Origin: Octopus bimaculoides
Taxonomy: Eukaryota
Assembly: GCF_001194135.2 (NCBI RefSeq)
Contig: NC_069003.1
Location: forward strand, 13,620,494 to 13,663,299
Direction: 5' to 3'
DNA: 42,806 bases
Part shown: in pieces, positions 13,024 through 13,371 of the stretch
Layout: each line of letters starts with the position of its first letter
Position numbering within the stretch: the stretch's first letter is position 1
The notes under the pieces: generated by a model
Database searches by the model: none
Told to the model about the DNA's origin: nothing
What the model saw: only the letters and a program-made list of their open reading frames with translations
Made by a program: the position numbers and the translations under genes

Positions 13024-13371
13024 ATGCAGTGGAACTGAATCCGAATCCATGTGGTTGGGAAGCAAATTTGTTAGCACACAGTCACACTTGCATCTATGAT
13101 AGTTGAGAGAAAAACAAAATGAAACAAAACAAGATGATCATGGCCGGAACACTTTTGCTCAATCGAGACTGACCTGCTGTTAAAGAAGAAAGCTTACAGC
13201 ATAAGAAGGTGAGAAAATTGCTTTACCTTTTTCACAGTCCCACAAACGGCAACTGTTGTCAGCTGAACCAGTCAATAATTTCTGGGTGCACCCTAAATGA
13301 CTTTGTTAAAGAAATAATATCACACATCCAAACAACCACCCTCATAAGCACCAAACATAACACTTAAGTAT
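13024..13371 (-). pseudogene. Duplicated eIF3I exon 3 cassette in intron 5 (copy of 18445-18792; exon copy 13227-13292)
   Basis: 348-bp direct copy at offset 5421 with 6 substitutions. The 66-nt exon, branch site and donor are identical. Confidence 0.9.

What the first reader, a model, noticed from the sequence alone, without database searches (positions are those of the whole stretch)
13024..13371. Second copy of the U12-acceptor exon 3 inside intron 5: potential minor-spliceosome poison route
Seen: a 348-bp copy (98.3%) of 18445-18792 with identical exon, U12 branch site TTTCTTTAAC and GTAAAG donor. One substitution adds an extra AG between branch site and acceptor (aacaaAGtcatttAG). Inference: every route using the copy hits a stop. 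U12 donor 19203 -> copy -> exon 6 reads g|ACTGGTGA = D-W-stop. Exon 5 -> copy reads GAPRNY-stop. If real, the gene has two competing acceptors for one minor donor, which could tie output of an essential translation factor to minor-spliceosome kinetics via NMD. Misassembly remains possible.
Basis: partly seen in the sequence, partly recalled or inferred. Interest (0 to 1): 0.7.

Follow-up and report, generated by a model that had tools for sequence, protein, structure and literature searches.

The report
Duplicated exon copy in octopus eIF3i
A 348-bp piece of the Octopus bimaculoides eIF3i gene, carrying exon 3 with its minor-spliceosome (U12) acceptor, was copied into a downstream intron in this lineage only, and it is most likely a young, largely silent pseudo-exon, not a proven regulatory switch.

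Summary
Window 13024-13371 is a gap-free 348-bp copy (6 mismatches, 98.3%) of 18445-18792, on the minus strand of the O. bimaculoides eIF3i gene. It contains an identical 66-nt exon 3, the U12 branch site and the GTAAAG donor. The U12 assignment is solid: the donor T|GTATCCTT sits at the same codon in three other cephalopods and a shark. Both predicted aberrant routes end in stop codons.

- **Real or artefact:** outgroups split the six differences 3:3, and both copies lie 23 differences from each outgroup. The copy also lies inside a contig, far from gaps, with 3-4 nt junction microhomology. This fits a real duplication about 2.5-9 My old, made by microhomology-mediated repair in a microsatellite.
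- **The "extra AG":** it is ancestral. Relatives splice correctly with it, and the native O. bimaculoides copy lost it.
- **Function:** there is no sign of constraint and no conservation, and no RNA data were available. The poison route is mechanistically allowed but unsupported.

The most likely reading is a near-silent pseudo-exon. Interest is modest.

The parts
13024..13371 (-). Copy A: 348-bp duplicate of the exon-3 region, inserted in intron 5, 83 nt upstream of exon 6
   Evidence: 98.28% identity to 18445-18792, no gaps, sharp ends. Absent from O. vulgaris and O. sinensis intron 5.
13227..13292 (-). Pseudo-exon: 66-nt exact copy of exon 3
   Evidence: identical string. It is a phase 1-1 exon placed in a phase 0-0 intron, so it reads GAPRNY* after exon 5.
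13305..13314 (-). U12-type branch-site motif TTTCTTTAAC in the copy; the acceptor AG at 13294-13293 lies 12 nt after the motif
   Evidence: Identical to the native motif at 18735-18726.
13301..13302 (-). Upstream AG between branch site and acceptor (ancestral state, retained in the copy)
   Evidence: O. vulgaris and O. sinensis native acceptors carry the same AG; native O. bimaculoides has AA.
13221..13226 (-). U2-type donor GTAAAG of the copy, 286 nt upstream of the exon 6 acceptor
13372..13399 (.). (GT)11 + ATATAG microsatellite abutting the copy: the insertion target
   Evidence: The orthologous (TA)n(CA)n tract is present in the relatives.
18445..18792 (-). Copy B: parental segment (79 nt of the U12 intron 2, exon 3, 203 nt of intron 3 ending inside a SINE-like repeat)
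   Evidence: repeat families D3, D4, D16 define the SINE at about 18344-18518.
18648..18713 (-). Native exon 3 of eIF3i (…W CTQKLLTGSADNSCRLWDCEK G…)
   Evidence: The assembled CDS equals XP_014772568.1 exactly.
19195..19203 (-). U12-type 5' splice site GTATCCTTT of intron 2; the only U12-type donor on this strand between 19300 and 12800
   Evidence: Conserved at the same codon in O. vulgaris, O. sinensis, Argonauta hians and a shark.
19204..19384 (-). Exon 2
15170..15297 (-). Exon 5 (U2-type donor AAG|GTATGT)
12830..12940 (-). Exon 6 (strong U2-type acceptor, 18/18 pyrimidines at -20..-3). The stop for the route exon 2 -> copy -> exon 6 is at 12935-12933.
8735..31017 (-). eIF3i coding range, isoform X2 (ATG 31017-31015, stop at 8735). 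The alternative first exon of isoform X1 starts at 31426.

Best explanation
The feature is a real duplication specific to the O. bimaculoides lineage. A 348-bp stretch of the eIF3i gene (the last 79 nt of the U12-type intron 2, the 66-nt exon 3, and the first 203 nt of intron 3) was copied in the same orientation into a (TA)n(CA)n microsatellite in intron 5. The insertion lies 5.4 kb downstream of the parent and 83 nt upstream of exon 6.

The copying most likely happened during repair of a break or a replication template switch, using 3-4 nt of microhomology at each junction (inferred).

The result is an intact-looking pseudo-exon with a U12-type acceptor and a U2-type donor. In most transcripts it is expected to be skipped, for two reasons (inferred). 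First, its acceptor needs a U12-type donor, and the only one (exon 2) has an identical acceptor 490 nt away that is transcribed first. Second, the adjacent exon-5 donor is U2-type, and the copy's acceptor is at best a mediocre U2-type 3' site.

Any occasional use gives a premature stop and would probably be removed by nonsense-mediated decay. That makes the copy neutral or slightly costly splicing noise, not a conserved regulator.
For: Shown:
- The duplicate exists as described.
- The window is O. bimaculoides GCA_001194135.2 CM046623.1 and the gene is eIF3i.
- O. vulgaris and O. sinensis carry the segment once, at exon 3, and lack it in intron 5.
- With those outgroups, 3 of the 6 differences are derived in the copy and 3 in the native segment. 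Each copy is 23 differences (6.6%) from each outgroup, against 6 (1.72%) between the copies. This is what independent neutral decay of two real loci predicts. It is not what a copy built from the same reads plus errors predicts.
- The copy lies inside a contiguous stretch (2624-17205), 3.8 kb from the nearest N gap.
- Junctions: ATAC is shared by the parent (tgaATACttaaatg) and the target ((ca)nATAC). CAT is shared at the other end, judged against the relatives' sequence. There is no poly(A) and no target-site duplication.
- U12 status: GTATCCTTT donor, TCTTTAAC 12 nt before the AG, conserved position in Argonauta and a shark. EIF3I is listed as a U12-intron gene (PMC6239176).
- There is only one U12-type donor upstream of the copy.
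- No constraint signal: 0 of 6 changes in the exon has P = 0.28, and the copy-lineage changes missing the splice core has P = 0.39 (computed).
- The literature says alternative splicing with U12 introns is nearly absent, because of U2/U12 incompatibility and rigid distance rules (PMC3584512).
Against: - There is no second O. bimaculoides assembly, no reads and no long reads to confirm the junctions. The available assembly is a fragmented short-read one (713,915 contigs, PMC10700109).
- Silence of the pseudo-exon is inferred, not shown. Its signals are identical to a working exon.
- U12 splicing is slow (PMC3584512), which leaves time for the distal acceptor to compete.
- U2-type donors can use U12-type acceptors in some genes when minor splicing is impaired (MAPK12, CENATAC; PMC8329584).
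- The copy's pyrimidine content at -20..-3 (11/18) is no lower than that of exons 8 and 9.
Confidence: 0.7

Rival explanations
1. Assembly artefact. The 348 bp in intron 5 does not exist in the animal. It was placed there by the short-read assembler or gap closer, for example from a divergent allele of the exon-3 region or from mis-projected mate-pair reads about 5 kb away.
For: - The only O. bimaculoides assembly is short-read, gapped and highly fragmented (PMC10700109).
- The insert abuts a microsatellite and repeats.
- The relatives carry a hard-to-assemble palindrome at the same site.
- The insert length (348 bp) is close to the length of the sequence the relatives have there.
- No independent confirmation was found.
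Against: - The copy differs from the parent at 6 sites and keeps the ancestral base at 3 of them, so it cannot be built from the same locus plus errors.
- An allelic origin would need 1.7% local heterozygosity. From my own recollection of the 2015 genome paper, not checked here, O. bimaculoides heterozygosity is far lower.
- Both junctions lie inside a contig, 3.8 kb or more from any gap. They share only 3-4 nt with the flanks, too little for a k-mer graph to join without reads that span them.
Confidence: 0.13
2. Functional poison route. A meaningful share of transcripts splice the exon-2 U12 donor to the distal copy, or include the copy after exon 5. These give NMD substrates, so eIF3i output depends on minor-spliceosome speed.
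For: - All signals of a working U12 acceptor exon are intact, and every route ends in a premature stop upstream of three or more exon junctions.
- U12 introns are spliced slowly and can be rate-limiting (PMC3584512).
- Precedents exist for AS-NMD tied to the minor spliceosome (SNRNP48/RNPC3 USSE) and for U2 donors using U12 acceptors (PMC3584512, PMC8329584).
- All three native-lineage substitutions since the duplication lie in the 79 nt before exon 3, including loss of the upstream AG. This could be read as tuning of the native acceptor.
Against: - The copy is absent from O. vulgaris and O. sinensis, so it is not a conserved regulator of an essential gene.
- There is no excess conservation of the exon or its signals (P = 0.28-0.39).
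- The clustering of the native-lineage changes is post hoc (P about 0.01 for position, and 0.1 for the ordered 3|3 split).
- The proximal identical acceptor is 12 times closer and is made first.
- NCBI lists only two isoforms, which differ at exon 1.
- No RNA evidence was available.
Confidence: 0.1
3. RNA-mediated origin. Unspliced eIF3i pre-mRNA was reverse-transcribed by a LINE or SINE machinery and inserted.
For: The copy is in the sense orientation, comes from a highly transcribed gene, ends inside a SINE-like element and lies next to another SINE.
Against: There is no poly(A) tail, no target-site duplication and no A-rich 3' end. Both ends lie in intron sequence, with microhomology at the junctions.
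Confidence: 0.05

Closest known systems
The conserved U12-type (GT-AG) intron of EIF3I in vertebrates
   Same: The octopus exon 2/3 intron has the same position and phase (…D|W, split after the first base of the Trp codon). It has a GTATCCTT donor and a TCCTTRAY-like branch site 11-14 nt from the AG in octopods, Argonauta and a shark. EIF3I is listed among U12-intron genes (PMC6239176).
   Different: Nothing differs for the native intron. The novelty is only that O. bimaculoides has a second copy of the acceptor side.
[quoted passage not shown]
   Same: Minor-spliceosome components direct an alternative splice that yields a degraded mRNA (PMC3584512, PMC8329584).
   Different: The USSE is a tandem U12 5' splice-site element that activates an upstream U2-type 3' site. 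It is conserved from plants to animals and is experimentally proven. Here there is a duplicated 3' side and exon, found in one lineage only, with no RNA evidence.
Mutually exclusive exons governed by U12/U2 competition (MAPK8/9/10 exons 6a/6b; TMEM87A/B)
   Same: Duplicated exons in one gene whose choice depends on which spliceosome pairs which sites (PMC3584512, PMC8329584).
   Different: Those exons are adjacent, frame-compatible and both coding. Here the copy is separated from its parent by exons 4 and 5 and is out of phase (a 1-1 exon in a 0-0 intron), so it cannot substitute for exon 3.
Poison exons / intronic pseudo-exons
   Same: An intronic exon-like unit whose inclusion introduces a premature stop.
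   Different: Regulated poison exons are usually highly conserved, and their inclusion has been observed. This one is 2.5-9 My old, lineage-specific and unobserved in RNA. It also has a U12-type rather than a U2-type acceptor.
Templated insertions / filler DNA from microhomology-mediated repair or template switching (MMEJ, FoSTeS/MMBIR) — named from my own knowledge
   Same: A few hundred bp copied from a nearby locus in cis, 3-4 nt of junction microhomology, no target-site duplication, insertion in a fragile microsatellite.
   Different: The mechanism is inferred from junction anatomy only. The 3' junction microhomology rests on the relatives' sequence as a proxy for the pre-insertion site.

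Membership tests
U12-type (minor-spliceosome) intron, GT-AG subtype (applies to native intron 2 and to the copied acceptor) | 5' splice site matching /RTATCCTT | tested here: met
   T|GTATCCTTT at 19203. It is the only such site on the strand between 19300 and 12800.
U12-type (minor-spliceosome) intron, GT-AG subtype (applies to native intron 2 and to the copied acceptor) | Branch-site motif TCCTTRAY close to the 3' splice site (optimum 11-13 nt, PMC3584512) | tested here: met
   TCTTTAAC (one mismatch) is followed by 12 nt ending in AG, with the branch A 13 nt from the junction. This holds in both the native segment and the copy.
U12-type (minor-spliceosome) intron, GT-AG subtype (applies to native intron 2 and to the copied acceptor) | No distinct polypyrimidine tract | tested here: inconclusive
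   11/18 pyrimidines at -20..-3, with a purine-rich stretch aacaaag next to the AG. Exons 8 and 9 of the same gene score 11-12/18.
U12-type (minor-spliceosome) intron, GT-AG subtype (applies to native intron 2 and to the copied acceptor) | Positional conservation with a known U12 intron | tested here: met
   Same codon and phase, with GTATCCTT, in O. vulgaris, O. sinensis, Argonauta hians and the shark Heptranchias perlo. EIF3I is listed as a U12-intron gene (PMC6239176).
U12-type (minor-spliceosome) intron, GT-AG subtype (applies to native intron 2 and to the copied acceptor) | Removal depends on U11/U12/U4atac/U6atac | not testable with these tools
   This needs a splicing assay or a minor-spliceosome knock-down.
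Regulated poison exon (AS-NMD cassette) | Inclusion introduces a premature stop upstream of an exon junction | tested here: met
   …DIKGAPRNY* (stop 13274-13272) and …CEKDW* (stop 12935-12933), each followed by three or more junctions.
Regulated poison exon (AS-NMD cassette) | Inclusion observed in RNA and stabilised when NMD is blocked | not testable with these tools
   No RNA-seq access. NCBI lists only isoforms X1 and X2, which differ at exon 1.
Regulated poison exon (AS-NMD cassette) | Evolutionary conservation of the cassette | tested here: not met
   Absent from intron 5 of O. vulgaris and O. sinensis. No excess conservation between the copies.
Tandem exon duplication giving mutually exclusive exons | The copy is adjacent to its parent and interchangeable in frame | tested here: not met
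   The copy lies after exons 4 and 5. It is a phase 1-1 exon in a phase 0-0 intron.
Microhomology-mediated templated insertion | Short insert copied from a nearby template, junction microhomology, no target-site duplication or poly(A) | tested here: met
   348 bp copied from 5.4 kb away. ATAC at one junction and CAT at the other, the latter judged against the relatives. No target-site duplication or poly(A).
Retrocopy / LINE-mediated transduction | Poly(A) tail, target-site duplication, loss of introns | tested here: not met
   None present. The copy keeps intron sequence on both sides.
Assembly duplication artefact | Copies identical or differing only by errors, next to gaps, or joined through long shared repeats | tested here: not met
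   3:3 ancestral/derived split and equal distance to the outgroups.

The most novel reading that the evidence does not exclude
O. bimaculoides eIF3i is a natural case of one U12-type donor facing two identical U12-type acceptors 5.4 kb apart. In transcripts where minor splicing lags behind transcription, the distal copy is chosen, skipping exons 3-5 and ending in a premature stop. NMD-coupled loss of eIF3i mRNA would then scale with minor-spliceosome speed. After the duplication the native acceptor acquired three substitutions, including loss of the upstream AG, and these bias the choice.
Probability: 0.08. Interest if true: 0.6.

Novelty: new member of a known kind. Interest (0 to 1): 0.3.

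Why it matters
If the insert is real, it is a small natural experiment. Genes almost never contain two U12-type acceptors, and alternative splicing involving U12 introns is nearly absent (PMC3584512). Junction counts in O. bimaculoides RNA could therefore show three things. One is how strictly the minor spliceosome prefers the proximal acceptor. Another is whether a U2-type donor can use a U12-type acceptor in vivo. The third is how much splicing noise an essential translation factor tolerates. It also documents a dated (about 2.5-9 My), microhomology-flanked templated insertion at a microsatellite that independently acquired a palindromic insert in the sister lineage. As it stands it does not change what is known about eIF3i or minor splicing.

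Tried and rejected
1. Independent confirmation of the junction. An exact look-up of a 47-aa ORF spanning the 13371 junction in public assemblies found nothing on record. This is uninformative, because such small intronic ORFs are rarely called.
2. A scan of metagenome contigs for the acceptor plus exon string gave 0 hits.
3. A second O. bimaculoides assembly. Only GCA_001194135.2 carries the gene, and it is identical to the window.
4. RNA evidence through the protein collection. The O. bimaculoides eIF3i protein has no Logan source, so aberrant isoforms could not be sought.
5. Look-ups of P0122 and of the Mya arenaria orthologue were not on record.
6. Non-allelic recombination between SINEs as the origin was rejected. 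The copy's end lies inside the parental SINE, but the target flank is not SINE.
7. Tandem duplication was rejected. No other segment repeats at the 5,421-nt offset.
8. The palindrome in the relatives as a MITE family. No other copy was found in the window or the loci, so an excision-and-filler model is unsupported.
9. Rfam and tRNA scans of the window found nothing.
10. A conserved GTATCCTT at 32291 was checked as a possible second U12 donor. The preceding sequence has stops in all frames, and the lead was dropped.
11. MaxEnt-type splice-site scoring was not available. Only pyrimidine counts were made.

Full report
**What is there**

The window is the reverse complement of Octopus bimaculoides chromosome CM046623.1 (GCA_001194135.2). 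A 26.7-kb locus fetched through the annotated protein matches it with 0 mismatches.

The gene on the minus strand is eIF3 subunit I. Nine exons assembled from the window translate to a 325-aa protein identical to XP_014772568.1. The exons, given high to low in window coordinates, are:

| Exon | Coordinates | Note |
|---|---|---|
| 1 | 31017-31015 | ATG only; 5' UTR not mapped |
| 2 | 19384-19204 | U12-type donor |
| 3 | 18713-18648 | 66 nt |
| 4 | 16515-16366 | |
| 5 | 15297-15170 | U2-type donor |
| 6 | 12940-12830 | |
| 7 | 10879-10790 | |
| 8 | 10297-10131 | |
| 9 | 8816-8735 | ends at the stop |

**The observation**

Window 13024-13371 is a gap-free 348-bp copy of 18445-18792 with six substitutions (98.28%) and abrupt ends. 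There is no third copy in the window. In gene orientation the copy holds four parts:

- the last 79 nt of intron 2, including TTTCTTTAAC and the acceptor AG;
- an identical 66-nt exon 3;
- the GTAAAG donor;
- 203 nt of intron 3, ending inside a SINE-like repeat whose other copies in the window match at only 62-88%.

It lies in intron 5, 83 nt upstream of exon 6.

**Is intron 2 a U12-type intron?**

Yes, as far as sequence can tell.

- The donor is T|GTATCCTTT.
- The branch motif TCTTTAAC is followed by 12 nt ending in AG. This is within the 11-13 nt optimum quoted in PMC3584512.
- The same donor sits at the same codon and phase in O. vulgaris, O. sinensis, Argonauta hians and the shark Heptranchias perlo. 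Each has a TCCTTRAY-like motif 11-14 nt before the acceptor.
- EIF3I is named among U12-intron genes in PMC6239176.

The native intron is therefore an ancient, already known minor intron.

**Is the copy shared with relatives?**

No. The O. vulgaris (L001) and O. sinensis (L002) loci carry the segment once, at exon 3, at about 92% BLAST identity. Intron 5 lacks it in both.

At the orthologous point the relatives have (TA)n, an unrelated palindromic insert of about 280 bp (O. sinensis) or about 200 bp (O. vulgaris), then (TA)n(CA)n…acatacatg|tagccgttgaccc. O. bimaculoides instead reads tatata(ca)n tac|[348 bp]|agctattgacccc. The insertion is therefore specific to the O. bimaculoides lineage, or to its assembly.

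**Real or artefact?**

I polarised the six differences with the two outgroups.

- The copy keeps the ancestral base at 13363, 13359 and 13301.
- The copy is derived at 13199, 13137 and 13103.
- The native segment shows the mirror pattern.
- Each copy is exactly 23 differences (6.6%) from each outgroup. The copies differ by 6 (1.72%), the same as O. vulgaris versus O. sinensis over this segment.

This symmetric pattern is what two real loci decaying independently would give. It cannot arise from re-using the native reads with errors.

The copy is also embedded in a contiguous stretch (2624-17205), 3.8 kb from the nearest N run. Its junctions share only ATAC and CAT with the flanks, too little for a k-mer assembler to join without spanning reads.

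A divergent allele misplaced by gap closing remains conceivable, because the assembly is short-read and very fragmented (713,915 contigs, PMC10700109). I could not obtain reads or a second assembly. I put the artefact at about 0.13.

**Age and origin**

Two calibrations are available from PMC10700109: 34 My for O. bimaculoides versus the vulgaris/sinensis clade, and 2.5 My for vulgaris versus sinensis. Scaling the 1.72% divergence between the copies to these gives about 9 My and about 2.5 My respectively.

The origin is best explained by microhomology-mediated repair or replication template switching at a fragile microsatellite (inferred). The supporting features are:

- same orientation as the parent;
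- a template 5.4 kb away in cis;
- intron sequence kept on both sides;
- no poly(A) and no target-site duplication;
- junction microhomology.

The same microsatellite independently acquired a palindrome in the sister lineage. SINE-SINE recombination, tandem duplication and retroposition do not fit.

**The "extra AG"**

[quoted passage not shown] The AG is therefore ancestral, and correct splicing coexists with it. The native O. bimaculoides segment lost it.

The AG ends 5 nt after the presumed branch adenosine, well inside the 11-13 nt optimum (PMC3584512). It would give a stop in either route anyway.

**Does the copy work as a poison route?**

It is mechanistically permitted. The copy is a complete exon-definition unit, with a U12 branch site, an AG, a 66-nt exon and a U2 donor 286 nt before the strong exon-6 acceptor. 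Slow U12 splicing (PMC3584512) could leave the exon-2 donor free until the copy has been transcribed. Several points count against a significant or regulatory role:

- The only U12-type donor on the strand is exon 2's. Its native acceptor is identical, 490 nt away against 5,911 nt, and is synthesised first.
- The neighbouring exon-5 donor is U2-type (AAG|GTATGT). U2 and U12 sites are generally incompatible. The known exceptions (MAPK12, CENATAC) appear when minor splicing is defective (PMC8329584).
- The element is absent from two congeners.
- There is no constraint signal. Zero of six changes in the exon has P = 0.28. The three copy-lineage changes missing the 94-nt splice core has P = 0.39. 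The ordered 3|3 split has P = 0.1.
- NCBI annotates only two isoforms, which differ at exon 1.

Pyrimidine counts do not exclude U2-type use of the copy's acceptor: it scores 11/18, like exons 8 and 9. Silence is therefore inferred, not shown.

**Verdict**

The U12 reading and the frame consequences are correct. The direction of the AG change is wrong. The regulatory idea is unsupported and untestable with the tools at hand.

The best explanation is a real, young, lineage-specific templated duplication that forms a largely silent pseudo-exon (confidence 0.7). It is a new instance of known kinds of event: an intronic pseudo-exon and a templated insertion. It has modest interest as a natural test of U12 acceptor choice.

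Noticed in passing
L002 21644-21925 (O. sinensis); L001 22118-22321 (O. vulgaris); orthologous to window ~13372-13399: At the exact microsatellite where O. bimaculoides has the exon-3 copy, the two relatives carry an unrelated near-perfect palindrome (arms ~240 nt overlapping, 98.8% self-complementary in O. sinensis) embedded in (TA)n. Its centre is deleted in O. vulgaris. It is not repeated elsewhere in the fetched loci, so it is not shown to be a MITE. The site looks like an insertion hot spot.
   Followed up: partly
window 18714-18792 (minus strand; last 79 nt of intron 2): All three substitutions that the native O. bimaculoides segment acquired since the duplication fall in the 79 nt upstream of exon 3, including loss of the ancestral AG between branch site and acceptor. 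All three copy-lineage changes fall in the 203 nt downstream of the exon. This is post hoc (P about 0.01 by position, 0.1 by order), so it may be chance.
   Followed up: partly
window 18858-19113; L001 ~13600-13950; L002 ~14150-14480: The U12-type intron 2 contains a ~62-nt tandem repeat. The intron is 490 nt in O. bimaculoides but about 1.1 kb in O. vulgaris and 1.5 kb in O. sinensis, apparently through repeat and SINE content.
   Followed up: no
window 31426-31403 and 31069-31015 (minus strand): There are two alternative first exons. Isoform X1 starts MPIVCNWK at 31426. The canonical exon 1 carries only the ATG (31017-31015), behind a pyrimidine-rich, TOP-like leader (ctcttcctctctc) that is conserved in O. 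vulgaris and O. sinensis.
   Followed up: partly
window 32291 (minus strand); L001 269; L002 621: A perfect U12-donor-like GTATCCTT preceded by 30 conserved nt lies about 1.3 kb upstream of eIF3i exon 1 in all three octopuses. It reads ATATCCTT in O. sinensis. The preceding sequence has stops in all frames, so no exon is evident.
   Followed up: partly
window ~6735-8972 (+ strand) versus eIF3i exon 9 (8816-8735, minus strand): The convergent neighbour (faint CLAMP-domain hit) is annotated with its coding range ending at window 8972. That is beyond the start of eIF3i's last coding exon, so the two genes overlap tail to tail in the annotation.
   Followed up: no
window 2255-2623, 17206-17580, 25742-25919, 30261-30508, 33919-34260, 40589-41273: There are six N gaps (2,197 N in total). 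One lies in intron 3, between the two copies, so the true distance between parent and copy is approximate.
   Followed up: yes
window 13186-13169 and 18607-18590 (minus strand): Both copies contain a second TCTTTAAC motif in the intron-3 part, followed by agcag|gtcagt. This is a branch-site-like and acceptor-like string directly abutting a donor-like GT. Its significance is unknown.
   Followed up: no
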